The translations under genes and the position numbers were made by a program. 64,000 nucleotides of DNA, from contig CM059449.1 in the NCBI GenBank assembly GCA_030390025.1, forward strand, positions 34,472,001-34,536,000. The letters run 5' to 3'. Shown one piece after another: positions 9,106 to 45,470 of this stretch. A model generated the notes under the pieces. The model did not search any database. It was not told the origin of the DNA and worked only from the letters and a program-made list of their open reading frames with translations. The DNA comes from Squalus acanthias (Eukaryota). Positions within the stretch are counted from its first letter, which is position 1. Each line of letters starts with the position of its first letter.

Positions 9106-11291
9106 AAAATATCGCATCTGTTGAGTACCGTTATCGGGTCCCAGAAACTTTTCAAACAGTGCCTTTTTTAATGTACATATCTGCGCTCCTACAATTCTGG
9201 CCTGTTGTGCATTCCCGATACAGGAATGGCGGATCCGAATAACTTCCCAATGCAACGTTCCAATTTACTGGATGCGCTGGAGTTTCCAAGTATTCTATTT
9301 TAACAAATCTGAGTCTGAAAATACCGAAAGAAAGCGGACGAAAGTGAATTCACCATTTAGAATAGCATTGTCATTTCCTAGTTGGAGCTAAAGTCCCTCT
9401 GTATACACAATAGATGTAATGAGAGCTGGGCACGGAATGGTCGATGCCGTGATCCGACTGTGTAAGATGTTGTGGATGCATTAAGCAATGTGCTCTGTGC
9501 TACATTTGTTGTCGCTTGCGGTTTATGTGCAGTGACTTTCTGCTAACACTGTTAGACTCTGACTGACATAAAACGAAACTTTGCGGCTTTAGCATCTGCC
9601 GAACTGGACAGACACCCACGTCCCTTCAACAAAGCTGTTTCCGTTACGTGCTGCACAGTTCCGCATGTTCAGTGTTCCAACCGTGAGAAGACAGCTAGAG
9701 ATCATTGAAACCTTTGCAATTTGCTGCATAACAGCAAAACAAACCATGAACAAACAAACTGCAGCGAATATGTAATGTCCAATATTCCATATCCCAGGAC
9801 TTGTGCTGAAAAGAAGGCACATTTCCCGTCTGCCTTCATTCCGCGGATCCACACCATGACTAGACCCCGCCAGTGTAGTAACTGCTGTGGAGAACCTCTG
9901 CTATACAAGTTAAAGGGCACAGTTCCATGTACCAGTATTATTCATTCAACAGTATTCGCATTCAATAATCAGCACCGAAACCTTACCAGGTACGAAAATT
10001 CTAGGTCCAGTACAAGTGCTCTAACTTTACCAGTGCAGAGACAACTAGGCTACTTCTGGCGGTGGACATTGAAGTCCCCACTCAGCGTACATTCTGTGTC
10101 CGTGCTTCCCTGAGCCTTTCCTCCAACCTGCCTTCAATATGGAGCAGTACTAAATCCTCAGTTAAGGGAGAGTGGGCTGTTTTGGTAGCTGGGCTCCAGC
10201 AGCAACTTTCCTTAGTCTTGCTTGACCGAAAGCCATGAGATATTTGTGATAGAGTATTTGTGCGTGAGGAATGGCGTGGTCTGGTTGAGAAAGATTGGAA
10301 ACTCTCACTGGGGGACACAGGTTCAACACAAAACTGGAAGAATGTGCGATTTCATATCAGTGTGTTATGGGGTCACACCGCCCCACACGGTGATTTCAGA
10401 TCAGTGTGTTACGGCCACTTTCAAAAGTGCAGAATAGCAGTTTAAAGGAAGTCAGATGACACAGATCGAGGTTAATGGCTTGGGAGTTGAAAACTAATAT
10501 TAGGAGCAACTTTTCTCAAGGATGATGAAAGCTACGATAAATTCTTCAGTAGGAAAGCACGAATGGTAATCATTGGCGGTGTTCCCAATGCAGTTCGTAT
10601 CTACTCGGAAAGTCCTGTCCACGGAGGGATGAGTTGCAATGTGCCCAATGGCTTTTTCTTCTACAGTAAATGTCACCCTATATTTTACCACAATAAATAT
10701 TTGGCACTGGTCCTCCAGGTTTCTTCAATATTAGTTTAGGAAACATCATTGAGGAAAAACCTGGTAAAATATAAAGAAAAATATTCCCCGCTCACTGAAC
10801 GCTACAGGTGTATGCTGGGATATTAGGCCTAGTTAACAATCCCAGATTGAACCGTCACCATTCAACTCAAAGTCCAAGCTTCTGAAAGAGGAGGAGGCCT
10901 TTGAGGAAGACATTAAAAGATGCAAAAGACAATTTATTGAATAGAATTAATTATTCTATTGTAAAATATAATAGCTGACGTTTTAAAATGTAATCTCTTA
11001 TTGTGGACAATAGAATGTTCAGATAACCGCGATTGAAAAAAAACACAAAATATGTTTGAGTGTTTGGTTGGATCTGGTTTAAAAAGATCAACCCTGGATG
11101 GATGGATGGAGGGGCTGACGGGCGGACTTCCATATTTTAGGTGTCATTTTATCTTCTCAGGAAAGATGTATTAATTTTAACTAAATAAATATTTCTGTTG
11201 TCAGAATATAAGTTTAGACTATTGCATAAATTGCTCAGTGAACTGGTGTTTGTAACACTTGATGTTATTTCAATATGTTATGGTGTTCTAG

Positions 11292-11551
11292 ATTCTCACT
11301 CTTTGATGAATCACTACACACTGGACCATGGGATTTCTGATCTTCCGGACTATTGTATAATGGAGGTTGTGGATGGCTGTGAGATAAACTATTGTGACAG
11401 CAATATGTACATAACGGTTCCAAGGAAGCAGTGGATGGTGAATTCCTATTACACCAGTTACTGTGAGGAACTCATAATTACTGCAGCCAGTTTCCACGGA
11501 ATCAGAAAGGGCAACTTTCCAGAACGTTACAGCAGATGAACCTCAGTTCAA
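11292..11551 (+). pseudogene. Orphan MHC class I alpha1 pseudo-exon (paralogue of the gene at 16646)
   Basis: TTCTAG acceptor and A|GTAAGT donor. Translation (D)SHSLMNHYTLDHG...DGCEINY...ITVPRKQWM...FHGI matches the intact alpha1 at 43 of the first 74 residues (hand count). It is 260 nt versus 261 nt, so a 1-nt loss gives a TGA at 11537-11539. W60 is replaced by C and Y7 by N. Confidence 0.9.
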
Positions 11552-16645: not shown

Positions 16646-16715
16646 ATGGACGGACGGGTCGGCATGTTTCTGTCACTTGTACTGAGTTTCTCCCGCCTAC
16701 AAGCGGCCCTGTCTG
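16646..16715 (+). CDS. MHC class I exon 1, signal peptide MDGRVGMFLSLVLSFSRLQAALS
   Basis: In-frame ATGs at 16646 and 16664, hydrophobic core, A-L-S cleavage site, phase-1 donor G|GTGAGT. Not in the ORF track. Confidence 0.85.
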
Positions 16716-19700
16716 GTGAGTAGCCGGTTCCCGCTGCATCATTGAATGTCTCCAGGCTCACCCTCTGAACTTAGACCTTAACCGGCAGGCCTGTCGCTCA
16801 CATCAGGTGTATCACACAGGGAAACTAGACAGTGTGTGCGGAAGTGAAGCGATGAAGCGGGATTGGAATCTCCATCCTGCTTCTCAGGCTCGCTTCTCCC
16901 TCTGCTTGGATTAGATGATGTCCATTACTGTCCGGACAGCCTGACATTACAGCTCAGTTACTATGACAGCTTGTATGTTCTCTCTGATAAGCAGGAGGGA
17001 GACGGACAGTGTGTTCCCGCTAAGCGGCTTGCGGGTACGGAAGTGTCAGTATAACTGCGAGCCCAATCCCGACCTGACCCCTGAGTGACCAAGAGCCCAG
17101 CGGCTAGACTCCTGCAGGAAAGCAGCTCAGTCGGTTCGGGTTCACACCTGTTTCAGTGTAACTCCAGCCGGCGGGAAGCTGCATTTTAAAAGCTTCTTTC
17201 TACCTCCTGGGAACTTGGAAAACCTTTTAAAACTCCCAATGAACCGGACAAAACATTAAAAATACAGAGGGAGGGGTTCACTTTTATCACAGGGGGAAAC
17301 GGGTTCCAGCGACCCGGGAACCTCTTTTACACTTTCCGACTCGCTTTAGAATGAAGCTTTGAGGCGGTCCGTGCAGGTTCGGGTGAAGATTGAGCTCCCA
17401 GAGTTAACCTCTCTGTCTCTTTCACACTGACCTGCTGCATATTTGCAACATTTGCTGTTTGTAGCGGATTCCCACCATGTGCGGTTCCATTCGGGCTCAT
17501 GTTGACTCTGTGCGATGGTGTAAAGAGGGCGAGAGCGAGTCTGAAGCCCTTTTTCCATCTTTCAACCCGTTCCCCCTTCTATTGAGTTCAATGGCAGTAA
17601 AAATCTGGAGAGCTGTAAAAGGAGCTGCCGACTGGCTATCGCCCGTTTTACTATCGCACAAAGTCAAGATCGAGCCCACTGACTGTTGGAATTGATCGGC
17701 GCCTGCTGCTCACAGCCTGGAGCTGTTCGGGGTAAACACCAGAGGCAGCTTTCGGCACCTGTTACAGCTGCTGTGGAAGAAAGAGAGAAAGAAAGAAATG
17801 CATTTCTACAGCGCCTTTCACCACCTCAGGACATCAGGTGGAAGCCGGTTTAACAGTAACTTTGAAAAAGGAATCGGACAAATACTTAAAGGGAAAACAA
17901 AAATACAGGGCTATGGAGAAAAAAGAGGTAGTGGGAATCATTGGCTTGTTCTACCAAAGAGCCGACACAGGCACAATGGGCCGAATGGGCTCCTTCTGTG
18001 CTGTCTCATTCCATGATTGGATGGAGTTAAATTACAGATCAGCCATGACCTAATTGAATGGCAGTAAAAGGCTCGAGGGGCTGAATGGCCTCCTCCTGTT
18101 CCTAAATTAATGTTGGTGATATTGGAGGTGAAATGCTTACCATATTGGTGTAACATTGCTTTGCCTGTTAACTTAATGGTGCAGCCTGTTTAAAACAAGT
18201 GGGATATTCGCTGTGTTACAACAGTGGACAATAACATGTCTTACTAATATTGCCAACAGTAATTTTAGGCAGAACATGTACAGCGGTACAGCGAGTAATA
18301 AGAGTCAATCAACAAGTGTATTTGTTGCTTGGTATGAAATTCCTCTTTTCACTATTTTAGCAGAGCCTCAATCTGTTCACAGCAGATAGATTTACACCAC
18401 CTCTGAAAGGGAGGAGGGTTGAATTTTCAGATTGTATAGCTTGTAAACTTTCTATCACCCAGCAGAAACATTGAAAGTGACCAGCCTGTGATTGGCCTTT
18501 CCTTGACCTTAACAAGGCGAGGCTGTATTTGTCAGTGAGGTTTGCACCTCTTCTGAGAAGGTGCAAACACAGGATTGGAGATTGCTACTGCTTTTAACAG
18601 CCAGCTCTATAATCGCTACCGATCAGGTTCAGTGGGAAATATTCTCGCCGGTGCTTTCAATTTGTGTCCCAGTCTTCCTCCAGTTTCAAGTCTTTGTCAT
18701 TCACCAGTGTGGTCTTTTCTAATCCAATTCCGCCCGCAGTTCCTAATGCTGGGAGTAGAGCCAGAGATTCCCTCCCCAGTGACGGGAGGTGATTTATTTC
18801 CCATTGGATAGAATGAGTTTCACTGAACGAGATAAGCAGAATAATGTGGGAGGGGTTCGGACAACGACAAAACCTTCCCGTTTCGCTGTGCAGGATTTTA
18901 ACTGAGTGACTCCCTGAAACATGTTCCTGTTTGCTTTACTAAGCCTTTACTTTTCTCAAAGGGTGGTTCCTGGTAAGTCAAATGACAGGAATTGTGCGGC
19001 TATATTCATTATTGCACGACATGACCGCCATCGAGAACAAAGTATTTGACCCCGGTTTAGTCCGGGTTACACTGACTGCCCCGTGTTTCGTCTGGGATAC
19101 AATGACTGCCCCGGTGTTTAGTCCGGGATACACCGACTGTCTCGGACATTGCGGATGCCCTGGGGGAGCTCCTGTGTTAGTTGAAACGGTGAGGTGACGA
19201 TAGGGCCTCGTGTGGCGTTGGACGCTTAAGAAAGGTGCTGGAGAGTTACTGCAGGACTGAAGTAATGTCCCCCAATCATAGATGGGGATTTGTGCGGTGA
19301 TTCAGACCGACGTGTTGGCAACGTTGGTTGGACTCATTCCAGGAGCTTTCATCACATGACCTCCAGCCCAGTCAACCCGTATTTTGTCCCCAGCTCCAAT
19401 AATATTATAATTGTGATTGTTGTGTTATTGTTGTTATCTTTCTCTCTAGTTTCTTGCAGCGGTGTCCAGGAGATTAATATTTAATTCCTGGAGACTGCGG
19501 GATAGTTCTGGAGGGTTGGTAAATATATGCTCCGCCCGTCAGATAGATTAAGTTGGTGGAGACAGTATAATTTTCGTGATTAGGCTTAATTTACATGAAA
19601 TGAGCGCCAAGACCTTTTGATTTAAAGGCAGCCTGCAGTCCCTTAAATGGCCGCTGCACTTTTCAAGGGTGGTTAATGGAGAGCGACTTACTGGAGCAGC

Positions 19701-22700
19701 AGGTTTCGTGACATGATCAGGTGTCCTCCGATTCTCTGGGCAACGGTGGAAGCGCTTGTAGGGCAAGTTAGCACGGGTATTGAGGATCTCGTCTCCTCTA
19801 ATAGGTAACGATAGGCCCGGCAAAATAGTCAGCTGTAATGGCGAGAGGTGGATGAGCAAGCCAATGGCAACAACATTGGGTATAAAGTGCATGGTACCCG
19901 AAAGCGGCTGATGGAGATCGACAGCCTGTTTTGGTCTATCGCCCAATTTTATTTTCCAATGACTTCAATCGAATAGAAATTCAGGCGGCGGGCAAAGCTG
20001 CCTGCTGATTCGCTATCGCCCATTCCGCGCTGCCGCCCAAGACAAATTTATATTCCATTTTCCCAAGGATCTGTCTGCATTGCAGGAAGAAACGTAATGA
20101 CCTCACCAGGACTGACAAGGTCAGACTCGGCTTCACATCTCTCTTACTGTCTGCACAGCCTCGCACCGCCTGAAGTTTGCCGCTGCACTTCTAATCCTTT
20201 CCTCCCCATTCCCATGGCTCTCCTCCAATCACAACTGACCCTTCACTACATTCCAGAGTGAAATTACCAGAAGCCCATTAACAGTTCAAAATGTTCAGCA
20301 GCCAGTACAAGCATTTTTAATGGATTAAGTAGTGAAATTCCACAAAATAATAGAAGAAAAATATCTCCCAAATATTACAAAATTTTATTTGAGACCAACT
20401 GAGGATTCCTTTAATATCTGCCTCCCGATTGGTTCCACATTGTGGGCAGGATCAGGAACTAGTGGGAACAATGTGGGCAGAGAGGGAAATATTACTGAGG
20501 GCCCTGAAAACGTCCTTTAACCCCAATTTGCATATATTCAAGCTGCTTTTTCCCCTCTTTTGCTCAGTAAATCTAAGGCCAATTTTAATGTCGCTACAAG
20601 CAGCGGGCTGGGAGCAGATCACTGCGCACACACCAGGGATGGATTCTGCACGGCTTAGTACCATAATTCTGGGTGCACTTCCTCACTAATTCACCAAAGA
20701 ATCCCCAGGTCAGACGTGGGACTAAAATCTTAAAGTTACGATTTACAAATGAGCTGAGCTGATGTAAATTATTTCAACCATCACATTTTTCATTTATTTC
20801 GAAAATGGGAATATTCTTGTAATTGGATAAGATTTAATATTAAGGCTCATTTTGCCTTCTCTGCAATGGTTTAACACGGGAGCGATGGCAAAATATCCAG
20901 TGTTCTCGCATTTTTCTGAATAAATTATTTTGTCCCTATTTGTTTAGCATTTCTGATATTTGTAGGGAAATGATTTTTTTAAATTATGTCCTAGAGTCTC
21001 ACTCTCTGTTATATTACTACACCCTGAACCATGGGAGTGCTGATCTGCCGGAGTACAGTTTTATGGGGCTTTTGGATGGCTGTGAGATAGACTATTACGA
21101 CAAAAATATGAAAATAACTGTTCCAAGACAGCAATGGATGGCAGAAGCATTTGAGAAGAGTTACTGGGACGAATACACAATAACTCAAGCTGGATTCCAC
21201 GGAATCATCAAGGGACAGGTTGATAGATGGTTGCAGCAGAACAACCAAACATCAAGTGAGTGTATTCGTTTGAATGAATGCAGCGAACGACAGGGGTCAT
21301 TTAAACTTGGGGGATAGTGTAACATGAGTGATATCAAACCGCCTGATATACACCCGCCTGATTTTCCCTTCCATTGACTTCAACAGAAAGGAACATTAGG
21401 CGAGGTGTATAATGGGCAACTAATTGAATATCACCCATTTTACACCCTCTCTGGAATGTAACATTAACCCCAATGAATGATGTTGGTGATACTGGGGGTG
21501 AAATTCAGTGTTGGTGGGTGTACAATGGGCAGTAGCAGCGAGGCCGCCCTTTATAAATGCTGCCTGATTTTCCTTTACATTCACTTCACAGTAAAATGGG
21601 CCTTGGTCTATAACAGGCGGCTTTTCCGCTGCCACCCGTTCAGCAACCCTGCTGAAGTTGAATTTCACTTTCAGCCAGATAAAATCCGGGCGCCTGTGAT
21701 TCAGCTTTTGTTTTACACCTCGATCGCAAAAGAAAATGAGATGTGGTGGAAAACGGGCGAAATATGGGCGCCTGTGAATCAGCTGTCGTTTTACACCTTA
21801 ATCGATTTTCTGAAAATCGGACATGATGTACTCTTTTGGTGCACACTATGAACAAATAAAGTGTAACTTAAAAAAACCATTAAAGGAAACCAAACAACTT
21901 AAATTAAAATGTTGTTACTGGTGGTGAAGATGCACTCCAGTCCCTGTGGTGCCCACCGGTCGTGGAAGATCACGAATGTGCTGGCGGACACCGTGGGCTC
22001 CATCTCCAGGGCCACCCGGGCGCGAACGTGGCCGCGGAAGAAAGGCAGGAAGTCGGGCCGAACGACCCCTTCGACCGCCCGCCGCCTTGACCAGTTGATG
22101 GCCACTTTGGCCAGGTCCAGGAGCAGTCCTACGAGGAGGTCCCCAGATCTGCCCGCTCCCCTCCGCACCGGGTGACCAAAGATCAGGAGCGTGGGACTGA
22201 AGTGCAGCCTAAAATCGAGGAGCAGCTTCTTCAGATAATGGAAGAGGGACCGCAACCTCTCACATTCGATATATACCTGGAACACGGACTCCTCCAGGCT
22301 CGGAGATGGTGTAAAGTGGGCGGCCGATTCAGCATTGGTCATATTTCACCTGGTGATAACAGGTAAAAATCCGCCCCTCTCCACCACCACTAGTTTTTAT
22401 TGAATGACATTTGTATTATTACATTTAAGTTATGATATTTGTAATATTATATTTATTTAATTATTTTGCTGGTATTTTACATGTAACTAATCATATTATG
22501 TTTATTGGGGTAATTTTTTACTCTTCAGCCAAAAAGAAAAATGGCCAATATTGGACCGACCGCCCGTTCTAAACCTCGCTCAGATTCCCTTTCAATTGGG
22601 CGAGGTTTATAATAGGCCACTGACCCGATATTTTTCGCTTTACACTATGACCACAATTTAAAATTAACCTCCCATTCATGGTAATATTACTTTTAATGAA

Positions 22701-25700
22701 TGATATTAGTAACACATTTATTGAATGACATTGGAAATAACACATTTATAGAATCACCTTGGCAATATTGTGTTTATTGAATTATACTGGCAATATTGAA
22801 TTGAAGGATTATTATTCATATCATTGCATTTGCTCAGTGATATTGGTAAGCACATATTTGATATTTAATGTAGATGTGTAAGTTTGAGGTTCCAATGCCG
22901 TCTTATATCCCGCAGGTGGCTTATCAGAAAAGCATAATGCACTGGCCGCAGTTTTCTATTCATTAGGAGTAAATTTTATAGTTGGGCAATAGTGTAAAAT
23001 GAGCGATATCGAAATGACTAGCCAATATACTCCCTGTCTGATTTGCGGGGTGCAAAATGGGCGGACGATCAAATATCGCCCATTTTACACTCTCAGCCAA
23101 AGTCAAAATTACTCCCATAGAGTCAAGTCCATTGGAACAAGGTTGGAGGACAGGGAATGTTAGCCTATGCTGTGCAAACATAACTCAGTCCCCAATTTAA
23201 AGTCATACATTCTGACATGTATTGTGACAGCATTGGCAAATATTCTGGTATGTTATTTATAGTTAAGTAACAACATTGCTGGAAAATTGTGAAGGTGAGA
23301 AGTAGAGTTGGTTTATACACGGGAGTTTTCCAGAAGTATAGGCTGAAGAGTTGGGCAACAAAAAACTGAGGCATTACAGCGCCACCACTGGAGCGAGGGT
23401 GCAATTGCAACATGCTGACTTTACATCGGCAACTCCCATTTCAAATGTTGACATATAGAATCATAAAATAATACAGCACAGAAAGAGGCCATTCAGCCCA
23501 TCGTGCCTGTGCCGGGTCTTTGAAAGCTATACAATTAGATCCACTCCCCTGCCCTTTCCCCAAAGCCCTGCAACGTTTCCCCTTCAAGTATTTATATCCA
23601 ATTCCCTTTTGAAAGTCACTATTGAATCTGCTTCCAACACGCTCTCAGGTAATGCATTCCAGATCACAACAACTCACGCATACAAGAAATCCTCATATCA
23701 CCTCTGGTACTTTTTCCAATTACCTTAAAGCTGTGTCCTCTGGTTACCGACCTCTCCCCATATTCACTCTATCCAACTCCTTCATGATTTTGAACATGAA
23801 TTCAGAGGAATTGATAATGGGATTAAAATGTGACAAAAGGAAGTAAGAACATAAGAACTTAAGAACATCAGAAATAGGAGCAGGAACAGTCCATTCGGCC
23901 CCTCGAGCCTGCTCTGCCATTTAATGAGATCATGGCTGATCCGATTTTGGCCTCAACTCCACTTTCCTACCCGCTCCCTATAACCCTTGACAGTTGCTCA
24001 AAAATTTGTCTATCTCAGCCTTGAATATATTCAATGACTCAGCTTCCACAGCTCTCTGAGGTAAAGAATTTCAAAGATTCACGACCCTATGAGAGAAGAA
24101 ATTCCTCCTCATCTCCGTCTTAAATCGGCGACCCCTTATTCTGACACTGTGCCCCCTCCTTCTAGACTCCCCCACGAGGGGAAACATCCTCTCAGCATCA
24201 ACCCTGTCCAACCCCCTGAAAATCTTTTATGTTACAATAAGATCACCTGATATTCTTTTAAACTCCAATGAATACAGGCCGAACTAGCTCAACCTTTCCT
24301 CATAAGACAACCCTTCCATCCCAGGAATCAACCTAGCGAACCTTCTCTGAACTGCCTCCAATGGAAGTATATCCCTCCTTAAATAAGGGGACCAAAACTA
24401 TATGCAGTAGGTTGTGTGGTCAGGTAGTACATACCATTTCTAATATAATATAGCTAGATTTATAGTTAAATACCAACATTTATTCAATTTGGGAAGCAGA
24501 GAAGTAGAATTGGTTGGAGCATCGCAGTTTCTCTGGGAAATGCAAAGCTAAATCCGACAGTGCCACCACCGGTGGGAGGGTGTAATTACATGATGACCAG
24601 CCGACGGTGGCAGCTTCCTTATAAAGGTGGACATAGGAATTTATAAAGGGAATTCTTAACACAAATGTAATTGAAATATGACAACAGGAAGTATGCTTTT
24701 GTGGACAGGAATTACACACAGATGTAAGAGTTTTAAATTTTCTACTCAATTTCCTGTTGTGTTGCATATGTGAGGTGTAATTCTAACTTTTGGTGACAGT
24801 GTAAAATGAGTGATATTGGATCGGCCACCCATTACACACTCCACCCAATCTTCCCTTCCATTGCGGCCATGGTGAATTGACAGCCCATTTTACATCTTTG
24901 AAAGTTAATAGAAGAACAATGGGTGGAGTGTAAAACAGATGCTGATTCGCTATGAGTCCATTTCGCACTACTGGCAAAGACCAATTTCACCTCGTCTGTA
25001 TTTTGCTCAACGGGTCATTGAGTATAACATCAGGGAATTGATGTTGACTTACAGAAGACATTGGTTAGGACACTGTTGGGGGTTTTCATGCAGTTCTAAG
25101 CACCTAATATAGCCGGAATATTACAGCAGACAGCTGCCGTTTAACTTTGGTGTCAATTGTTCTCTTTCTGTGCTGTAAATTCTATGTCCCTGTGTGATGA
25201 ACCTTGTTTTAGATACTAAACGCCATTTCTATCTGGAAAGAGTGACTAAAATATAACTGAAATTCTCAGATTTGGTGTGAATAGATGAGATAATTATGTA
25301 GCTATTGATCGATTCAATTTCTGTTCTAGGTACTCACTACCTTCAAGGACTGTTTGGCTGTGAGCTGAATGATGCCAATCCTAGTGTAGGGATTTTGAAG
25401 TTTGCTTATGATGGAAGATACGCATTTAGTTTTGATAAAGACAAATTGGTTTGGACTGTACATGATCCAGTAGCTCAGACCTTCAAAGTGAAATGGGATA
25501 AGGAAACAAAGATGAACCTTTATTTCAAGAGCTTGTTAGAAAAGGACTGTGTGGATTTATGGAGGACATACTATTCACTTGGAAACGCATCACTAACCAG
25601 AAAAGGTAAGTTCAGAACAACTTGGGGGTAAATTTAAAATTATGGCGATAGTGTAGAACTGGCGATATTGGATCAGCTTCCGTTACACACTCTCCCCATT

Positions 25701-28700
25701 CTCCTTTAACAGGCGGCTGATCCGATATCACTTGTTTTACATTAGTGGCAAAAGTTAAGATGACTTCATTCATTCTATTGTGAAATGTGCGACTTTTATT
25801 GAAGTTGAAAATAACTGTCGTTCTATCATGTAGTTTCCCCTGAGGTCTCAGTTATTGCCAGGGCTGCTGATCGTTGGTTTCTCCACTGCATTGTGACTGG
25901 ATTTTACCCGCAGCCCATCAGCGTTACCTGGTTGAAGAATGGAGAAGATGCCCCTGAGACCAAATCTACTGGGTTATTGCCCAATGAAGATGGGACGTAT
26001 CAACTGACGACAACCCTTGAATTTGATCCGTATGATGGGAAACAATACTCCTGTCATATTGAGCACAGCAGCTTGCCGGGTGGGAAAACAGTCTCCTGGG
26101 GTAAGGACATGAGCAGCGATACTGAACAATCCATCAATAATAGCAACAATCACCCACACCTGTCTTGCTCTTTCTCTCTTTTTCTTTACACATCAGACAG
26201 CACTTTGGTTATCTCTGTACTTCAGGTTGTCTGTGACTGTTCCTCATTCGTTCTCTCTCTTTTAGTCCATTTCTGTTATCTTCTGACTCTTCCATAATCT
26301 GCACCCACCCCTCCGTGTGTGCTTCTCACACACTTGCTTTCTCTCTATATCTTTCCCATTGCTTCTTGCTGTCTATCTCCACTCTGTACCCACACCCCAC
26401 ACACACCGCACGGTCTCAGAGTTAGATAACAAATGAATCTCTGTACACAGTCTATCTGGGTTAGAGAATGGATTAATCTGCATTCACCACCCACTCGCAG
26501 ACATCAGACTCTTTATTTGCCCGACTTGCTGTTGCTTCACTCTTTGTTTCTGCTTTCTCATTGTTGTTCCCTTTCACTGTGGTGATGGATCTGCTCGGTT
26601 TCTGAGCTGGAACTTTTGCTCGGTGCTGAGCTATTTCACTCTCAGCCTCAGTGTGTTTTTGCTTCTCTTGTGTCTTTGTTGAGGTGGGGAATGAGGTGAC
26701 GGGTCACTTTGGGATATGAGAGGAGGAGTGGGGAAGTGTTGTGAGGAAAGGTCATTAAAATGTAGTGCAGTGGGGGGAGGGGTGATAAAATAATGCGGCC
26801 TGGCGGCAAGGGTGGGTCTGAGGCTGGGCTCCTGAGGCGGGGATGGGCCGAAGTCCACTGGGAGCTGCAGGCAGGGAAGGTGGGGGCGGTGGGCTTTGCC
26901 CAGAAAGCAAGAATCTGCAGCAAGAATGAAGGTTGGGACAGGCGGGGCGGGTGGTGGACCCCAGGAATCAGCCTAGAAATTGCTGTTGGTGATTACCAGG
27001 GTCACCAAATGTCTCCAGGGGAACCTCCTGCTATTGGTTTAGACACAGCGGGGTAGATTTCCAACCTGCCGCCCGGGTGTAAAACCGGAGTTGCCTCCAA
27101 TGGGAATGAAAAGCGGGCAGTTTGTGTGACAGGCGGCTGATCCACAGCAGAAGGCTCACACCAGAGCGGCGCGGTGAACATCTACCACAAATTGTTTAAT
27201 AGATAACGGTGCTGCTCATTCAGGTCTCTCCATGGAAAGGTGCCTCCCTCAGGGGAACAGGTAGGATGATCCTTATGACCTGGAAATGTATTTCTGATCG
27301 GTTACTGCGCTGATCCTCTGCTGAGGGCAAGTTCCAGATGTTGCGGCCCAACCTGTGCAGGTCCCAGTTGTTTATAACAATCCCTTGAATTAGAAAATCG
27401 GTTCATTAAAGTCAGTTTTATAAGCTGCATATACACAGCTTCATATAATCAGATCTGTNNNNNNNNNNNNNNNNNNNNNNNNNNNNNNNNNNNNNNNNNN
27501 NNNNNNNNNNNNNNNNNNNNNNNNNNNNNNNNNNNNNNNNNNNNNNNNNNNNNNNNNNNNNNNNNNNNNNNNNNNNNNNNNNNNNNNNNNNNNNNNNNNN
27601 NNNNNNNNNNNNNNNNNNNNNNNNNNNNNNNNNNNNNNNNNNNNNNNNNNNNNNNNNNNNNNNNNNNNNNNNNNNNNNNNNNNNNNNNNNNNNNNNNNNN
27701 NNNNNNNNNNNNNNNNNNNNNNNNNNNNNNNNNNNNNNNNNNNNNNNNNNNNNNNNNNNNNNNNNNCGCTCNNNNNNNNNNNNNNNNNNNNNNNNNNNNN
27801 NNNNNNNNNNNNNNNNNNNNNNNNNNNNNNNNNNNNNNNNNNNNNNNNNNNNNNNNNNNNNNNNNNNNNNNNNNNNNNNNNNNNNNNNNNNNNNNNNNNN
27901 NNNNNNNNNNNNNNNTATCTCTCTATATATTTCTCTCTCGATTTCGATCTGAATATTTTGAAAATGTTGAGTGTGGTCAAGTTTCCAAAGCTGCTGCTCC
28001 ATTCCAACAACATTAGGTGACAGATTGAAAATGATAGGGTTCCGCCTATTGTTGAACGATACCAGAAAGCTGCCTTTGCAGTATATTGAGAGCTCGAATT
28101 AAAGAAACGGAGTCTGTATGCAGTTACAGAATCGGACCACTGAGTGTCACTGTGGAGCATTCAGGGTTTTGGAGACAGCAGTCATGTTGCTATCGTTAAG
28201 TAAAAGAAGGTAAACATTTAACTATCTGAATTAAATGTAAACTTTTATGTAGATAATTTGCTTATTTACAATTCTCATGAGCGGAAGTCTTGCACCTTGA
28301 GCTCCCTCTCATCACACGGAGCTGTGGGGACGGTCAGAAGCTCGATCCCCCAGCCCTGGGAGCTGGCACAGTGGCATCATCAATTCAACTGCCATTACTT
28401 ACCCCTCATATTGCCCCTTTCACCAGTCCCGCAGACACAGGCCTCTGCTAGTTTCCTACATGGCTCCCCTTACACAGCGATCCATGGGGGGTTGCAGGAG
28501 AGGGGACAGCTGGTTTTCCCTCTGCCTCGCTGGGCACCACGACCACAACCCTTTTCCATTGTCCTCCCAGCTGCACATTCCTATCGCTGGCCCAGCCCCG
28601 ATCAGTCTAGAAACCATGCTTCACTCTTCACAGCCATTGCTCCTCCCCCCACCTACCCTGACACCTTTACAGCCTGACCGCCTCTCGTTGACTATAACCT

Positions 28701-30667
28701 GTGTTTATTCACAAAAAGTGAACTTTGTGGTTTTAAAGAAACCTGGCTCCACCTTAGTGAAATAATACATTGTGCATTATATGGTGTGAGGATACTGTCC
28801 ATAGAAAACAGCGCATCATCCTACTTACCATGAGCAGGGCCATAGGTTTCCACTGATTATATATAAAACTGTCAATCCGCACATATAATTATACAAACCT
28901 TGCTAATATTTTTCAGATGGAAAAGTAGAGAAAGAGAAGCATGTGGGGCTGATTGTCGTGTGTGTACTGCTGTCGCTGGCTTTCGTTATAGTAGTTTTAA
29001 TCTATATGTGGAGGAGAAAACGAAGAGGTAAGTCGAGAGAATATGCTGCAGTCTTGTTTGTAAAAGTATGACACAGCGGCTTTACAGAAAATCTTTTGGC
29101 CGGCCCCAAGATTATATTTTGAATTTTAAATATCTGTTATAAAGAAAAAAAAAGAAAATCTTGCATTTATATCGCGCGCCTTTCACGACCTCAGGACGTC
29201 CCAAAGCGCTTTACAACCAATGAAGTGCTTTCCTTATAAGTGTAGTCACTGTTGTAATGTAGGAAACGCGGCAGCCAAGTTGCGCACAGGGATCTTTTAC
29301 ATCCACCTGAGAGGGCAGATTGGGTCTCGATTTAACGTCCCATCTAAAGACAGCACCTCCGACAGTGCAGCTCTCCATCAGCACCGCACTGGTGTGTCAG
29401 TCTAGATTTTACTGCTCACGTCTCTGGAGTGGGATTAAATTGGTTAATTTGTTAACTTCTGTAAGAACAACTGGAATTTTATCGAGGGAAAGTTACTAAT
29501 GGAACTCTAAGTTTAATCACACGAGGTACAGAACATAACAGCCAAGAAGTAAATATGAGACTCTATAAAACCTTAAAACCGGAGTTAGAACACTGTGTGC
29601 AGTATAGAATTTCACGCGATAGGGGGGATATTGAGCTTCAGAGAAGCTACAAGGTGGATTCACTCGGAAGCTGCCCGATAGAAGGAAACACAAATACAAG
29701 GAAAGACTTGGAAAATGCGCATTTTTATTAGAAAAATGCATATTACGGGTGATATAATACAAGTGTTTAAAATGATGGAAGGATGGCACAGGGTAGATAG
29801 AAGCATACTGTTTCCAGTAGTTGAGGGTCAAGAATGAGGGGTTATAGATACTAGGTTAAATGTTAGAGATTTAGAACAGAGGGCAGGAAACGATTCTTTT
29901 CACAGTGCGTTGTGAGGCTGTGGAATCCACTTCTAGTGATAGATGTTGAGGCAGAAACTATCTCAACATTTAAGATTAGATTGAGAAGGTGGACAAAGGG
30001 AAATGGGGTTGATGGGATATGAGAACAGGATGGGTAAATGTGATTAGTAATATTTACTGTTGTGTAGAGTAAATGCCAATACGCATTGGTTCGGCCAAAG
30101 GATCTCTTTCCATGTTGTAGCTTCTACTTTATTCGATATGCATGTGCCCCAAGTGTAGTGAAATTAAAATCCAGTTCTTTATGCACAAATTTAGGGGGTG
30201 AAATTGGGCGATAACACAAAATAGCCACTAGTGAATCGGCTGCCATTTCATTGAAGGCAATAGAAAAGCCCATGTGGTAGGTGTGTAACTGGCTGGTGAT
30301 TCGCTATCGCCATTTGGCGCCATCGCCTGAGCCCAATTTCACCTCATTAAGTTTTGTAACAGGTGGCCCACACATGAAAACTTTCCCCATGGTAACACCA
30401 TCAGCATCAACATGAATTTATGTTTGATTGATATGTTAAGACGGAAGCATACGTGCTAATAACCTTTATTACCAATACCATCGTATTATTACAAGCGTTC
30501 TCTCTGAACATGTGTCTTTTCAGAACAAGGCAGACATTTCAAATACTTCCTTAAGCAGCACCACCAACTCCTGCAAATCAAAAAAAAACAGGTTTAAGAA
30601 AGGAGGTCAGCATCACAGTCCATGGAAAGGCTCATTTCCTCTGGAACGTTTTAAAGGCGAACCTTAA
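16646..30667 (+). CDS. Non-classical MHC class I heavy chain, spliced gene of 6-7 coding exons (~385 aa with the micro-exon, ~352 aa without)
   Basis: All introns are GT-AG and phase-compatible (phase 1 between domains). No stops or frameshifts in leader-alpha1-alpha2-alpha3-TM. Canonical class I motifs present. Confidence 0.93.
20995..21255 (+). CDS. MHC class I exon 2, alpha1 domain
   Basis: 261 nt, CCTAG acceptor, A|GTGAGT donor. ESHSLLYYYT...PEYSFMGLLDGCEIDYYD...PRQQWM...YWD...NQT (N86 sequon). Confidence 0.95.
21830..22305 (-). mobile_element. Tx1/L1-clade non-LTR retrotransposon 3' fragment in MHC intron 2
   Basis: GC-rich ORF 21899-22342 ESVFQVYIECERL...LLIFG...LLLDLAKVAI...RW resembles the C-terminus of Tx1-type ORF2. 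Confidence 0.65.
23455..24410 (-). mobile_element. Two CR1 3'-end fragments in tandem
   Basis: catagaatcata and aagaacataagaac tails followed by reverse-complemented CR1 3' UTR and RT C-terminus. Confidence 0.85.
25330..25605 (+). CDS. MHC class I exon 3, alpha2 domain
   Basis: 276 nt (the canonical alpha2 exon length). THYLQGLFGC(101)...AYDG...W...KW...C(164)...Y. TTCTAG acceptor, G|GTAAGT donor. Confidence 0.96.
25834..26100 (+). CDS. MHC class I exon 4, alpha3 Ig C1 domain
   Basis: 267 nt. PEVSV...LHCIVTGFYP...VTW...LLPNEDGTYQ...YSCHIEHSSL...W. TGTAG acceptor, G|GTAAGG donor. Confidence 0.97.
27459..27915. other. N run (gap or masked low-complexity sequence) in MHC intron 4, with a 5-base island cgctc at 27767-27771
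   Basis: Seen directly; the right flank is TC/TA-rich. Confidence 0.99.
28917..29027 (+). CDS. MHC class I exon 5, connecting peptide and transmembrane helix
   Basis: 111 nt, TTTTCAG acceptor, G|GTAAGT donor. DGKVEKEKHVGLIVVCVLLSLAFVIVVLIYMWRRKRR. Not in the ORF track. Confidence 0.93.
29155..29435 (-). mobile_element. Deu-domain SINE (SacSINE1/AmnSINE1-like), internally deleted
   Basis: Tail cttgcatttatat...cctcaggacgtcccaaagcgcttt and Deu core gatcttttacatccacctgagagggcaga...cacctccgacagtgcag. Recognised from memory of the family. Short pieces also at ~17790 and ~49612. Confidence 0.75.
29520..30125 (+). mobile_element. Old CR1 LINE 3' fragment in MHC intron 5
   Basis: Degenerate LYKTL..PELEHCVQ and ttcacagtgcgttgtgaggctgtggaat motifs. 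Confidence 0.75.
30194..30346. mobile_element. Harbinger-type MITE with TTA target-site duplication, just upstream of the candidate micro-exon
   Basis: TTA|GGGGGTGAAATTGGGC ... GCCCAATTTCACCTCA|TTA. Confidence 0.85.
30363..30391 (+). CDS. Candidate MHC class I cytoplasmic micro-exon (29 nt, GGPHMKTFPM)
   Basis: TTTTGTAACAG acceptor, ATG|GTAACA donor. Converts phase 1 to phase 0 and opens the Ser/Thr-rich frame of the last exon. Confidence 0.55.
30524..30667 (+). CDS. MHC class I terminal cytoplasmic exon (two usable reading frames)
   Basis: Strong acceptor GTCTTTTCAG. Phase 0: NKADISNTSLSSTTNSCKSKKNRFKKGGQHHSPWKGSFPLERFKGEP* (stop 30665-30667). Phase 1: EQGRHFKYFLKQHHQLLQIKKKQV* (stop 30595-30597). 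Confidence 0.7.
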   Translation, partial: NKADISNTSLSSTTNSCKSKKNRFKKGGQHHSPWKGSFPLERFKGEP

Positions 30668-31365
30668 CGCCTAGTGGTGAATGAAAGGGGGCTGACAGGA
30701 CACAGATCCACATTAATTGTCTCAGTGACAATGCAAGTTTAATAACCTTCCTGATTCAGTATTGTAGCGAGTACTTTATCTTCCGACAGGCCACATTCAC
30801 ACTGCAGCCTGAGGATCCCTGAGGGATGGTTTGGCTTAACGCCAGATGTTTTAGTGTAAATCCAGACTCAGGACCCCACCTGACTACCAGGTGAAGTCGA
30901 GGGAGACTGCCTCCTCCAGAATATCCCTTCGCACCAAATCTAATGTTGTGATGTAAATGGTTTCCGAGTGGCATTAAGATAGAAGGTGGAAATATACTCA
31001 GAAGATCAAAAAGCAGACTGGAACTCCCAGGTGTTAAACACCTTCCGTCAGATTTCATTTCCCGGAGAGCCCCATTAAGGCAAATATTGTCCGTCCCTAC
31101 TGTGGTCATTGCACCTTCATAGGTGCAGGACAAGGTGGAGAGTCATTGGGTGTCATTTTCAGATTAGGAGATAGTGTAAAACAGGCGTCATCGGATCAGC
31201 GACCCGTTACACAACTCTCCCAACTTTCCTTCCCATTGATCTCAAGGAAAGGACAATCGGGAGAGGTGTATAACAGATACCCGACCCGATATCGTCCATT
31301 TTACATTAACGCCAACAATTAAAATGACCTCCATTGGGGTATAAATTTGTCTTGCGCAGTAGTTC

Positions 31366-31521
31366 AAATGGGGAGAGAGTGACCTGGCAGCAAAATGGGA
31401 GAGAGCCACTTGGTAGCAAATTGAGCGATAGCGACTTGGCAGCAAAACGGGAGAGAGCGACTTGGCAACTAAATGGGAGAGAGCAACTTGGAGGCAAATT
31501 GGGCGACAGCGACTTGGCAGC
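31366..31521. repeat. 26-bp minisatellite, ~6 copies
   Basis: Unit approximately aaatgggagagagcgacttggcagca. Confidence 0.85.
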
Positions 31522-31897
31522 CGGGCAGTCCGGAGGGCAAACAGGTCTCTCCGGTTTCATCGCCTGTGGAACTGACTGGAACCTGCACAACATTAACGGA
31601 ACGATAAGGCTACCGGCCTCCAGGCGAAGGTAGTGAGAATCGACCGCTCTTTAGGCCCGCTACTCCTGTGCACTAAACTAACTGCCTCTGAGCTACCTAT
31701 AAGGGGAAGAACCATGAAAAGAGAATGAACAAGTCACTTCATTCTCTGTACTGTGCTCTGCACCTTCATCTCGGGATTATCTAACATATGGATTTCACTC
31801 CCTAGATTACAACTTTGTTTAACCAGAACCTGAGAGGGTCAAACGCGAGTCTTGCATTGGATCCAAGAACACACTGAAATAATCATCGTGCATCCTA

Positions 31898-32850
31898 GGA
31901 ACATATGAACATAGGAATTGGAGGAGGCCATTTAGCCCCTGGAGCCTGCTCCGCCATTCAATGAGTTCCTGGCTGATCTGTGACCTAACTCCATATACCC
32001 ACCTTTGACCCATATCTCTTAATACCTGTGGTTAACAGAAAGCTATCAAGCTACGATTTAATATTAACAATTACTCTTGCATCAATTGCCGTTTGCGGCA
32101 CAGTGTTCCAAACTTCTACCAGCCTTTGTGTGTAGAAGTGTTTACTAATTTCACTGCTGAAAGATCTGGCTCTATTTTTTAGACTATGCCCCCTAGTCCT
32201 AGAATTCCCAACCAGTGGAAATAGTTTTTCTCTATATACCCTATCTGTATCACTTAATACCTTGAAAAATTCGATCAGATCATCTCTTAACCTTCTAAAT
32301 TCTAGGGAATACAAACCTAATTTGTGTAATCTCTCCTCGTAACTTAACCGTTGAAGTCCGGGTATCATTCTGGTAAACCTATACTGCACTCCCTGCAAGG
32401 CTAATAAGTGGTTCCTAAGGTGTGTGGCCCAGAACTGCTCACAATACTCCAGGTGTGGTCTAACTAGGGTTTTGTATAGCTGCAGCATAACTTCTACCCC
32501 TTGTATTTTAGCCCTCTAGGTATAAAGGCCAGCAGCCCATTAGCCTTTTAGATTATTGTCTGTAACTGTTGATGACATTTTAATGATCTACGTACCTGGA
32601 CGCCAAAGTCTCTTTGGACCTCCACTGTTTGTAGCATTCACTATTTAGAAAGTACCCTGATCTACCCTTTTTAGGTCAAAAGTGAATGACCTCACATTTA
32701 CCTACAATAAAATCCATTTGCCACAGTTTTGCCCGTTCACTTAATCTGTCGATATCCCTTTGTAATTTTATGCTTCCATCTACAATGCATACAATTTCAC
32801 CTATTTTTGTGTCGTCGGCAAATTTGGATATATGTCTTTCTATGTATTCA
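31898..32850 (-). mobile_element. CR1 LINE RT C-terminus and 3' end
   Basis: ORFs 32676-32861 (FADDTKIG) and 32051-32488 (LYKTLVRPHLEYC). Confidence 0.95.
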
Positions 32851-38362: not shown

Positions 38363-39239
38363 CTGCAAGTGCGAGAATGGATAAATAAATCACGATTATG
38401 GACATCAAAAGCAATCCGATCAAAAAAAAGTGTAATAATTAATGCTGATTTTCCCTTCACTCAAATCATTCACTCTCTTTGCCACCTAGACGTGGGAATC
38501 CTGAGGATGCCGAACTATTTATCCAACCACGCCACATCCTTTGTTGCCTGTGTAGCCTCAAAGGAAAATATTGGCTCCAACATTGCGATCGGTGGCGTAG
38601 CTCGGAGTACAAACTTACCTTGTGGTAGGCCCAGAACGGAAACTTGCTTTCGGCGCAGCAGAGCTGTGCGCAGCGTATGACATCACAAAGGGCAGGTGAG
38701 CAACGTGCAGCCTGTGCGTAAGGGAAGATACGCCCACAAAACGTGTAAAGACTAAGCCACGCCCACATAAACTGCTTTCTGCCTCTTCCATTGAAATTAC
38801 ATCTTAAAAACTTTTAGAAACTTTTCTTTTACTTAAAATGTCACTTGGACTTGTTTCGTTTATCAGCATTTTGCTGTATTTCTTCATCCAAACTCACAAT
38901 TTAGTAGTCGCTATTTATACAGCTTCCTGTTCTGATACTCAGTAAAGATCTAACACTGGTATAAGTAATGTTGTTGAACTTCAGATAGAGATTCCCAGCC
39001 ATATATTCAATGTTAACTTTCAGGCTTAAAATATATTATTCAGACCTCATTTAGACTGTGAATAGATAAATCAATGTTCTTGTTATCGATGCATTATATT
39101 GCTTGTTATGTTGTTCATGTTTTAGCTGAAAGGACAGAATTGTCACTGAAATCTGATAGATGTTCACTTTATTTCAATTTCATTTTCACTTTCCAATTAA
39201 TTAAAATTAAACTCGACCGACAATATATACACACATATA

Positions 39240-45400: not shown

Positions 45401-45470
45401 AGAACTTATTTTGAAAGCAGAAGTTCTGCGAGTCCACAACACTAACAGACAACGTCGCTTCTCTCCGAAT

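What the first reader, a model, noticed from the sequence alone, without database searches (positions are those of the whole stretch)
16646..30667. Intact, divergent non-classical MHC class I gene with a hydrophobic binding groove
Seen in sequence: a complete open, phase-consistent class I gene. By manual alignment to HLA-A2 numbering it keeps Y7, Y59, K146, W147, Y171, C101/C164, Q96 and the N86 sequon. It replaces R/Y84 with Q, F/Y123 with A, T143 with F, Y159 with L, W167 with L and D122 with Y. Groove-facing positions are mostly aromatic or aliphatic (Y9, F24, L95, G97, F99, L114, F116, F143, F156, L159). Established: loss of the peptide-terminus anchors marks non-classical class I, and hydrophobic grooves are typical of lipid binders such as CD1. 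Inference: this molecule presents non-peptide or hydrophobic ligands and may belong to a poorly described or new chondrichthyan lineage. I cannot assign it to UBA/UCA/UDA/UEA/UFA by eye.
Basis: partly seen in the sequence, partly recalled or inferred. Interest (0 to 1): 0.85.

Follow-up and report, generated by a model that had tools for sequence, protein, structure and literature searches.

The report
Shark UGA non-classical class I gene
This is an intact, transcribed shark gene of the already named UGA lineage of non-classical MHC class I molecules, which are thought to present lipids as CD1 does in mammals, so it is a new species copy of a known kind.

Summary

**Gene model.** The model has six exons on the + strand. 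They are 16646-16715, 20995-21255, 25330-25605, 25834-26100, 28917-29027 and 31806-31822. All junctions are GT/AG and phase 1, giving 333 codons plus a stop.

**Assembly gap.** The N gap lies inside intron 4. Contigs from four runs (RNA by guess) cover exon 5 and the terminal exon. Three show the exact 29027>31806 joint. One carries the last ten letters of exon 4 directly before exon 5.

The exon ending at 30667 has no spliced support. The true tail is RRKRR-DYNFV-stop, a YxxPhi sorting motif.

**Lineage.** Each ectodomain exon matches PDB 9CH4 at E 1e-43 to 1e-45, about 76% identity and no gaps. 9CH4 is titled "shark nonclassical MHC class I, UGA" and was released 2026-03-18. Orthologues occur in 14 elasmobranch species. 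Per-domain trees place the window inside that clade.

**Function.** A 2025 review says UFA and UGA are CD1-like and bind lipids.

**Other notes from the scan.** Unchecked notes describe further non-classical class I genes about 1.06 Mb downstream on the same piece.

The parts
16646..16715 (+). Exon 1 coding part: start codon and signal peptide (MDGRVGMFLSLVLSFSRLQAALS, plus the first base of the next codon). The 5' UTR is not mapped.
   Evidence: The sequence is, and the GT donor at 16716 is. It is 88% identical over 17 aa to the leaders of two Pristiophorus orthologues.
20995..21255 (+). Exon 2, alpha1 domain (261 nt).
   Evidence: Pfam MHC_I gives E 1.2e-6. PDB 9CH4_A residues 2-87 match at E 2.4e-43 without gaps. 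AG and GT sites and phase 1 are.
25330..25605 (+). Exon 3, alpha2 domain (276 nt).
   Evidence: Pfam MHC_I gives E 2.9e-15. 9CH4_A residues 89-179 match at E 1.1e-44 without gaps.
25834..26100 (+). Exon 4, alpha3 Ig C1-set domain (267 nt).
   Evidence: Pfam C1-set gives E 1.4e-20. 9CH4_A residues 182-268 match at E 1.2e-43.
27459..27915 (.). Assembly gap: two N runs with five letters between them. It lies inside intron 4 and no exon borders it.
   Evidence: The N runs are and the exon coordinates. In orthologous proteins alpha3 and the TM segment are contiguous. The loose end AGTCTCCTGG lies before place 28916 in run X5.
28917..29027 (+). Exon 5: connecting peptide, transmembrane helix and basic stop-transfer (111 nt).
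   Evidence: A hydropathy scan found it and the sequence is. It is 82% identical over 34 aa to Pristiophorus P0002. Contigs of all four runs cover it. Runs X2 and X3 carry an in-frame 3-nt deletion at 28989.
31806..31822 (+). Exon 6 coding part: it completes the D codon, then YNFV and the TAA stop (31820-31822). The 3' UTR continues to at least about 31997.
   Evidence: A phase-1 scan found it and the sequence is. The joint 29027>31806 with GT..AG ends is seen in X2, X3 and X5. X1 shows a one-letter variant of the same joint. Eleven of 20 orthologue models carry YxxPhi at this place.
30524..30667 (+). It is not part of the gene model supported here.
   Evidence: Depth is near zero. The only contig here is X1 record 4 at 30478-30571, which crosses the proposed acceptor unspliced. 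In phase 1 the exon stops after 24 codons.
11291..11550 (+). Orphan UGA-like alpha1 pseudo-exon, 5.1 kb upstream of the start codon. It keeps its AG and GT sites but has a frameshift near its 3' end and a stop in the main frame.
   Evidence: tblastn gives 58% identity over 74 aa plus a second piece in another frame. Its best matches are UGA orthologues at 57-43% identity. No other related exons lie upstream.

Best explanation
**What it is.** The locus is the UGA gene of this shark. Judging by its nearest relatives, the shark is a squalomorph-like species. UGA is a conserved, low-copy, non-classical MHC class I heavy chain.

**Shown here.**
- The six-exon gene is intact (333 codons).
- Its transcripts are spliced as modelled at introns 4 and 5.
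- It is orthologous to the crystallised shark UGA.

**Inferred mechanism.**
- The heavy chain pairs with beta2-microglobulin.
- Its groove has lost three of the eight peptide-terminus anchors (84 Q, 143 F, 159 L). It is lined by lineage-invariant aromatic and aliphatic residues.
- It therefore holds lipid-type ligands rather than peptides.
- The 10-residue cytoplasmic tail ends in D-Y-N-F-V-COOH. This YxxPhi signal lies close to the membrane, as in CD1 and lysosomal membrane proteins. It would recruit AP-2/AP-3 adaptors and carry the molecule through endosomes and lysosomes for lipid loading.
- The loaded molecule is then shown to T cells, possibly innate-like ones.
For: **Gene model.** Splice sites and phases are.

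**Domains.** Pfam assignments are.

**Identity to 9CH4.**
- E-values are 2.4e-43, 1.1e-44 and 1.2e-43 for the three ectodomain exons, collinear and gap-free.
- My own count on those alignments gives 65 of 86, 69 of 91 and 66 of 87 identical residues.
- The entry title 'Crystal structure of shark nonclassical MHC CLASS I, UGA' is given.

**Distinct clade.**
- The alpha2 search of 1.84 billion representatives returned three relatives at 87, 85 and 73% identity. Nothing else exceeded 45%.
- The search with P0002 returned 18 orthologue and paralogue proteins. One more species appears.
- Per-domain trees place the window inside that clade. SH-aLRT is 99 for alpha2, 97 for alpha3 and 85 for alpha1, rising to 96 for alpha1 when one skate paralogue is included.

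**Groove conservation.** Residues are conserved in gap-free family alignments.

**Transcripts.**
- Exon 5 and the terminal exon are covered in 4 of 4 runs from two studies.
- Most of introns 4 and 5 shows no depth, apart from repeat-derived peaks.
- The GT..AG joint 29027>31806 is in 3 runs, plus a variant in the fourth.
- The end of exon 4 is found as a loose end before exon 5.

**Tail motif.** It is present in 11 of 20 orthologue models.

**Literature.**
- PMC12562908 (passages) says UFA and UGA are CD1-like, MHC-linked and single or low copy, and that crystal structure and mass spectrometry suggest lipids.
- PMC10751288 (passages) describes UFA as CD1-like.
- PMC2194227 (passages) describes the YXXphi motifs of CD1d tails and AP-3.
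Against: - Lipid binding by UGA is known to me only from a review that cites a personal communication. No primary paper was found.
- No ligand, groove volume or trafficking was measured here.
- The runs are only guessed to be RNA and are coded.
- The listed support for the exon 4-exon 5 joint is ten letters in two records of one run.
Their junctions rest on protein collinearity.
- Structural neighbours after 9CH4 are classical chicken class I, YF1*7.1 and MR1. No CD1 chain is in the top 50. No CD1 chain is among the alpha1 or alpha2 sequence hits.
- Five of the eight peptide anchors are kept, so a peptide-containing or lipopeptide ligand is not excluded.
- Nine of 20 orthologue models lack the tail motif. 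These are alternative isoforms, truncated models or read-through models.
Confidence: 0.85

Rival explanations
1. It is a UGA orthologue, but the groove holds something other than lipids. Candidates are a small metabolite as in MR1, a lipopeptide as in chicken YF1*7.1, a restricted peptide set, or nothing at all. In the last case the molecule would act as a receptor ligand or chaperone.
For: - MR1 chains are the best non-fish, non-bird matches of alpha1 (E 2.5e-6) and are among the best of alpha2 (E 4.1e-13). Zinc-alpha2-glycoprotein also matches alpha2 at about 5e-12.
- NCBI's automatic names call several orthologues 'MR1-like'.
- YF1*7.1 entries that present acylated amino acids or peptides score Z 25.6-26.0.
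- Y7, Y59, K146, W147 and Y171 are kept.
Against: - The review states that crystal structure and mass spectrometry of UFA and UGA suggest lipids like those of human CD1d.
- Positions 143, 159 and 167 are hydrophobic throughout the lineage.
- The tail motif fits endosomal loading.
Confidence: 0.15
2. The model is an assembly chimera. Under this reading the gap in intron 4 joins two different UGA-like copies, so exons 1-4 and exons 5-6 are not one gene.
For: - The gap length and continuity are unknown.
- A UGA-like alpha1 pseudo-exon upstream shows that duplication took place here.
- Relatives have up to three copies.
- Only ten loose letters are listed for the exon 4-exon 5 joint.
Against: - The ten letters are exactly the end of exon 4.
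- A 343-letter contig of X2 holds exon 5 and the terminal exon, plus 90 further letters on the exon 4 side that do not lie on the stretch that was laid (record 9).
- Phase is kept across the gap.
- Identity to Pristiophorus is similar on both sides: 87-92% for exons 2-4 and 81-82% for the short TM exon.
- The same runs hold 0.50-0.66 of the words of exons 3-4.
Confidence: 0.04
3. It is a decaying or non-functional copy. Under this reading it is transcribed but makes no working protein.
For: - A pseudo-exon lies next door.
- The neighbouring GPCR is in pieces.
- LINE debris surrounds the gene.
Against: - All six exons are open with canonical splice sites.
- The window's end branches in the trees are short, at 0.018 to 0.047.
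- Invariant family residues are kept.
- Spliced contigs come from two studies.
Confidence: 0.03

Closest known systems
Shark UGA heavy chain, PDB 9CH4 ('Crystal structure of shark nonclassical MHC CLASS I, UGA', released 2026-03-18)
   Same: - All three ectodomain exons align to it end to end without gaps, at E 1e-43 to 1e-45 and about 76% identity.
- The lineage-specific groove residues are the same: L95, G97, F99, L114, F116, F143, L159 and L167, using recalled HLA-A2 numbering.
- The NQT sequon and the unpaired Cys in alpha1 are also shared.
   Different: - It comes from another species. Its alpha1 is most like the orectolobiform orthologues.
- There are 21 or 22 substitutions per domain, for example position 24 is F here and I there.
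- The crystal construct ends at alpha3, so the TM segment and tail cannot be compared.
CD1 (lipid-presenting class I-like molecules of tetrapods)
   Same: - It resembles CD1 in how it probably works. Peptide-terminus anchors are lost and groove residues are hydrophobic.
- It has a short tail with a membrane-proximal YxxPhi motif, as described for CD1d and CD1b (PMC2194227).
- The literature calls it 'CD1-like'.
   Different: - There is no specific sequence kinship. No CD1 chain is among the 56 alpha1 hits at E up to 1, nor in the 60 alpha2 hits shown of 503.
- The Pfam MHC_I_3 hit scores 18.1 bits against a cut-off of 35.
- No CD1 chain is in the top 50 fold matches of the orthologue model.
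- Orthology to CD1 is not shown.
Chicken YF1*7.1 (PDB 3P73, 9EB2-9EB6)
   Same: It is a non-classical class I molecule with the ordinary class I backbone that presents acylated ligands. Z is 25.6-26.0 over 263-272 residues against the orthologue model.
   Different: It is 31-32% identical and belongs to a bird-specific lineage. No relation beyond the class I family is shown.
MR1
   Same: It is among the best sequence matches outside fish and birds. Automatic annotation names several orthologues 'MR1-like'.
   Different: About 33-34% identity in the fold alignments. MR1's ligand-binding residues were not examined here.
Classical shark class I, UAA (PDB 6LUP)
   Same: It shares the domain plan and exon phases, and Y7 and Y59.
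   Different: - Alpha1 matches only at E 5.3e-12.
- The Pristiophorus orthologue is 36% identical to it.
- UAA keeps R at position 84 where the window has Q. The alpha2 anchors were mapped against Anolis class I 7CPO, not against UAA.

Membership tests
Elasmobranch UGA lineage (non-classical MHC-Ib) | Close, collinear sequence match to the named UGA heavy chain (PDB 9CH4) over alpha1, alpha2 and alpha3 | tested here: met
   E-values are 2.4e-43, 1.1e-44 and 1.2e-43, with no gaps and about 76% identity in each exon.
Elasmobranch UGA lineage (non-classical MHC-Ib) | Falls inside the clade of UGA-type orthologues, apart from other class I sequences | tested here: met
   The family of 20 rows forms one side of a branch, with SH-aLRT 99 (alpha2, 163 rows), 97 (alpha3, 101 rows) and 85 (alpha1, 54 rows). 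The background rows carry no UAA, UBA, UDA, UEA or UFA labels.
Elasmobranch UGA lineage (non-classical MHC-Ib) | Single or low copy number | tested here: inconclusive
   The window holds one intact gene and one alpha1 pseudo-exon. The rest of the genome was not searched. Unchecked scan notes report other non-classical class I genes 1.06-1.07 Mb away.
Elasmobranch UGA lineage (non-classical MHC-Ib) | Linkage to the MHC | not tested
   The only evidence is an unchecked scan note of an MHC class III region 20.96 Mb before the window on the same piece. No MHC marker gene is in the window.
Elasmobranch UGA lineage (non-classical MHC-Ib) | Binds lipids | not testable with these tools
   This is stated for UFA and UGA in a review as a personal communication. 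It needs protein work.
Classical MHC class Ia (UAA) | The eight conserved residues that hold the peptide termini (7, 59, 84, 143, 146, 147, 159, 171) | tested here: not met
   Five of the eight are kept. Position 84 is Q, 143 is F and 159 is L. This was read from the alignments, with recalled numbering.
Classical MHC class Ia (UAA) | High polymorphism in alpha1 and alpha2 | not tested
   Only the stretch right of the gap was laid on reads. It showed one in-frame 3-nt TM variant.
CD1 | Specific sequence similarity of alpha1-alpha2 to CD1 | tested here: not met
   No CD1 chain is among the alpha1 or alpha2 PDB hits listed. MHC_I_3 scores 18.1 bits against a cut-off of 35. That this Pfam model is the CD1-type one is recalled, not from a call.
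CD1 | Tyrosine-based YxxPhi sorting motif in a short cytoplasmic tail | tested here: met
   The tail is RRKRR-DYNFV-stop and is joined to exon 5 in spliced contigs. The motif is present in 11 of 20 orthologue models. This is a resemblance in function, not evidence of membership.
CD1 | Deep hydrophobic pockets that bury alkyl chains | not testable with these tools
   No coordinates could be analysed. Only residue identities at groove positions were read.

The most novel reading that the evidence does not exclude
UGA and the GPR139-like receptor genes beside it may form a conserved functional unit, not a chance neighbourhood.

- The pairing is seen in this shark (receptor exons at 37066-38411 on the - strand and 45414-45557 on the + strand).
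- It is also seen in the little skate. There RefSeq models even splice the UGA TM exon onto the receptor (P0152, P0183 with PF00001 plus PF00129).
- An unchecked scan note reports class I genes nested in a GPR139-like cluster 1.06 Mb away.

If this is real, UGA-type molecules could escort or partner chemoreceptor-like GPCRs. That would resemble what is recalled for mouse M10 class Ib molecules and V2R receptors.
Probability: 0.05. Interest if true: 0.7.

Novelty: new member of a known kind. Interest (0 to 1): 0.3.

Why it matters
- **A further UGA sequence.** UGA and UFA are the candidates for the oldest lipid-presenting MHC molecules. This locus adds a full, transcript-supported gene model from a shark that is not among the annotated species found here. 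Its nearest relatives are Pristiophorus, Heterodontus and Heptranchias.
- **Strong conservation.** Alpha1 and alpha2 align without gaps between sharks and rays.
- **A testable tail signal.** A separate 17-base terminal coding exon supplies a YxxPhi tail, and that exon is spliced directly to the TM exon. This gives a direct handle on whether endolysosomal lipid loading predates the split of cartilaginous and bony vertebrates.
- **What it is not.** It does not open a new lineage.

Tried and rejected
I rejected the micro-exon plus 30524-30667. In phase 1 that exon stops early. It has no spliced contig, while the joint 29027>31806 is seen in three runs plus a variant in a fourth.
- **A micro-exon after the acceptor at 30403-30404.** I tried to place one by eye. 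In phase 1 it runs into a stop. I did not pursue it further.
- **A second class I gene in the window.** Only the alpha1 pseudo-exon at 11291-11550 was found.
- **Context genes.** Ten long ORFs gave only reverse transcriptase or endonuclease domains (4 of 10) or nothing (6 of 10).
- **The skate paralogue P0032 as the counterpart of PDB 8GM8.** This was rejected. Its best solved match is 9CH4 (2.9e-60), and 8GM8 reaches only 2.8e-32. What 8GM8 is remains unknown to me. It is the second-best alpha1 match, at 3e-12 over 62 residues.
- **UCA as an alias.** This rests only on recall of a dogfish gene. No Squalus protein appeared among the 18 relatives, so I do not equate them. The two J Immunol papers that define UDA and UEA are not held.
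- **The primary UGA paper.** Searches for '9CH4', '8GM8', UFA/UGA/CD1/shark terms and related phrases found only the 2025 review and the 2023 MBE paper. It may exist outside the library. Supplements were closed and not asked for.
- **Trees.**
  - I left out 12 skate isoforms or fragments: P0003, P0151-P0153, P0155, P0158-P0163 and P0183.
  - I also left out rows whose match covered under 80 query residues (alpha2) or under 65 (alpha1, alpha3).
  - The trees used the quick method on 86-91 columns.
Full report
**Observation**

The region holds a class I gene on the + strand.
- Reading the DNA gives a leader exon from the ATG at 16646 to 16715. Alpha1 is 20995-21255, alpha2 is 25330-25605 and alpha3 is 25834-26100.
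- A hydropathy scan found the connecting-peptide/transmembrane exon at 28917-29027.
- Every exon has an AG acceptor and a GT donor and is entered in phase 1.
- Pfam assigns MHC_I to alpha1 (E 1.2e-6, 28.7 bits, only just above the 28.3 cut-off). It assigns MHC_I to alpha2 (E 2.9e-15) and C1-set to alpha3 (E 1.4e-20).
- tblastn with the exons found no second copy in the window, except an alpha1-like piece at about 11.3 kb.

**The assembly gap**

- The N runs are 27459-27766 and 27772-27915.
- They lie inside intron 4, more than 1 kb from either exon, so no reading frame crosses them.
- In the orthologous proteins the alpha3 and TM segments are contiguous. In P0002, for example, they are residues 198-285 and 286-318. 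No exon is therefore expected in the gap.
I then laid the part to the right of the gap.
- In that call run X5 shows, before place 28916, the loose letters AGTCTCCTGG. These are exactly the last letters of exon 4.
- A 343-letter contig of X2 holds exon 5 joined to the terminal exon. It also has 90 more letters on the exon 4 side that do not lie on the laid stretch.
- This supports one transcription unit across the gap, but the listed evidence is thin.

**The 3' end**

- In phase 1 the acceptor at 30523/30524 reads 24 codons and stops.
- Orthologue proteins end, straight after the basic stop-transfer, in [D/E/A/G]-Y-N-x-[V/I] in sharks and D/A-Y-[Q/E]-x-I plus ten residues in rays.
- A phase-1 scan for such an exon found AG|AT TAC AAC TTT GTT TAA at 31806-31822, behind a pyrimidine-rich tract.
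- Laid contigs settle the matter.
  - The joint 29027>31806 (listed as 29025>31804 with cut +2, ends GT..AG, skipping 2778) occurs in X2, X3 and X5.
  - X1 has a variant of it: 29024>31804 with one letter between.
  - All four runs cover exon 5 and 31804 onward.
  - Bins 30116-31715 have next to no depth.
- The coding sequence is therefore 1002 nt, which is 333 codons plus a stop. This matches orthologue lengths of 330-334.
- Caveats: the runs are only guessed to be RNA, they are contigs, and they come from two studies under two coded organism names.

**What it is**

- Each ectodomain exon finds the same solved chain far above everything else. That chain is 9CH4_A, residues 2-87, 89-179 and 182-268, at E 2.4e-43, 1.1e-44 and 1.2e-43, without gaps.
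- By my count on those alignments the exons are 65 of 86, 69 of 91 and 66 of 87 identical to it.
- The next hits lie 30 orders of magnitude lower. They are 8GM8, shark UAA 6LUP, fish and bird class I, and MR1.
- The sequence search names the chain only as 'Ig-like domain-containing protein'. To read the entry title I folded the closest natural full-length relative instead of the window's spliced model.
  - That relative is Pristiophorus P0002, folded with a 48-sequence alignment. Its mean pLDDT was 90.2.
  - I searched the PDB with that model.
  - The top match is 9CH4, 'Crystal structure of shark nonclassical MHC CLASS I, UGA', released 2026-03-18. Z is 28.0, rmsd 2.0 and 267 residues are aligned.

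**The lineage**

- The alpha2 exon searched against 1.84 billion representatives gave 448 proteins at E up to 0.001. Only three were close (87, 85 and 73% identity), and nothing else exceeded 45%.
- Those three are from Pristiophorus japonicus and Leucoraja erinacea.
- A word-based search with P0002 gave 18 proteins, from 13 species. They are:
  - Pristiophorus (3 proteins)
  - Heterodontus
  - Heptranchias
  - Chiloscyllium
  - Stegostoma
  - Cetorhinus
  - Scyliorhinus
  - Mustelus
  - Rhinoraja
  - Pristis (3 proteins)
  - Leucoraja (2 proteins)
  - Hemitrygon
  - Mobula
- Amblyraja appears, which makes 14 species. All carry automatic names such as 'F10 alpha chain-like' or 'MR1-like'.
- Per-exon identities to the window run from 87-92% (Pristiophorus) down to 54-70% (divergent Pristis paralogues).
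- Alpha1 and alpha2 align across all of them with a single one-residue gap in one paralogue.
- Per-domain trees place the window inside the clade. They use the quick method on short alignments, and their background rows are unlabelled.
  - SH-aLRT is 99 for alpha2, 97 for alpha3 and 85 for alpha1.
  - Alpha1 support rises to 96 when one skate paralogue is included.
- In the alpha2 tree the sister group has support 95. It consists of that skate paralogue plus three Callorhinchus proteins.

**Residues**

- On the printed alignments to 6LUP and 7CPO, the window keeps Y7, Y59, K146, W147, Y171, the alpha2 disulphide pair and the NQT sequon.
The HLA-A2 numbering is recalled.
- The family alignment shows that the GFHGI[I/V]KGQ helix segment, F or L at 116, F/L/M at 143 and L at 159 are near-invariant. 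The 167 place is L in 17 of the 19 orthologue rows. They are lineage characters rather than species oddities.
- I did not verify on coordinates which of these residues face the groove.

**Mechanism**

- *Shown:* the gene is intact, it has spliced transcripts, and it is orthologous to the crystallised UGA.
- *From the literature (passages only):*
[quoted passage not shown] It lies in a class Ib cluster with UDA and UEA (PMC10751288).
  - UFA and UGA are CD1-like, MHC-linked and single or low copy. [quoted passage not shown]
- *Inferred here:* the tail RRKRR-DYNFV-COOH is a YxxPhi signal of the kind that links CD1d and CD1b to adaptor complexes and lysosomal loading (PMC2194227). I therefore expect endolysosomal lipid loading and display to T cells.

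**Points against the 'CD1-like' label**

- By sequence and backbone the molecule is an ordinary class I relative.
- No CD1 chain is among the alpha1 or alpha2 hits shown.
- No CD1 chain is in the top 50 fold matches, which are chicken BF2, YF1*7.1, duck class I, MR1 and shark UAA.
- 'Works like CD1' is plausible. 'Is a CD1' is not supported.

**Novelty**

- The lineage is named and has a public structure, so this is a new member of a known kind.
- No primary paper was found in the library.
- Supplements were closed. Two key J Immunol papers are not held.
- I therefore cannot say whether the tail exon or the receptor synteny is already described.

**Surroundings**

- A UGA-like alpha1 pseudo-exon with a frameshift lies at 11291-11550.
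- LINE fragments flank the gene.
- A GPR139-like receptor lies downstream in pieces. Its main exon is on the - strand at 37066-38411. An exon-1-like piece is on the + strand at 45414-45557.
- The same neighbour exists in the little skate. There RefSeq isoforms join the class I TM exon to the receptor.
- Unchecked scan notes mention further non-classical class I genes in a GPR139-like cluster 1.06-1.07 Mb downstream. They also mention an MHC class III region 20.96 Mb upstream on the same piece.

Noticed in passing
window 11291-11550 (+): An orphan UGA-like alpha1 pseudo-exon lies 5.1 kb upstream of the gene's start codon. Its AG and GT sites are kept. It is 58% identical to the live alpha1, has a frameshift near its 3' end, and has lost the conserved YW. 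No other exons of that copy are in the window.
   Followed up: partly
window 37066-38411 (-) and 45414-45557 (+): Pieces of a GPR139-like receptor lie downstream of UGA. The main exon is split into overlapping pieces, which suggests frameshifts or an insertion. A piece matching the skate receptor's first coding exon lies on the other strand. The little skate has the same neighbour, and RefSeq isoforms there fuse the class I TM exon to the receptor.
   Followed up: partly
window 28989-28991: Contigs of X2 and X3 carry an in-frame 3-nt deletion in the TM exon that removes one Val. X1 and X5 do not. It sits at a TAGTAG repeat. The variant is present under both coded organism names, which suggests one species or shared polymorphism.
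   Followed up: no
window 29116-29515 and 31916-32515: Contig depth is very high here, from thousands to about 60,000, with many loose ends. These are interspersed repeats, in intron 5 and in or after the 3' UTR, that are transcribed from many loci.
   Followed up: no
window 577-3627 and 54955-55671: LINE fragments are present. Three ORFs carry reverse transcriptase and one carries an endonuclease domain.
   Followed up: no
proteins P0032, P0141, P0136, P0132 (not in the window): In the alpha2 tree the UGA clade has a sister group with support 95. It consists of a skate paralogue plus three Callorhinchus milii class I proteins. The skate paralogue sits on the same 127 kb contig as a second skate UGA copy (P0157). 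This hints that the wider lineage predates the split between elasmobranchs and holocephalans.
   Followed up: partly
PDB 8GM8 (not in the window): This is the second-best solved match of alpha1 (E 3e-12 over 62 residues). Its chain is named only 'MHC class I protein', and I could not obtain its title. It could be another shark class Ib structure.
   Followed up: partly
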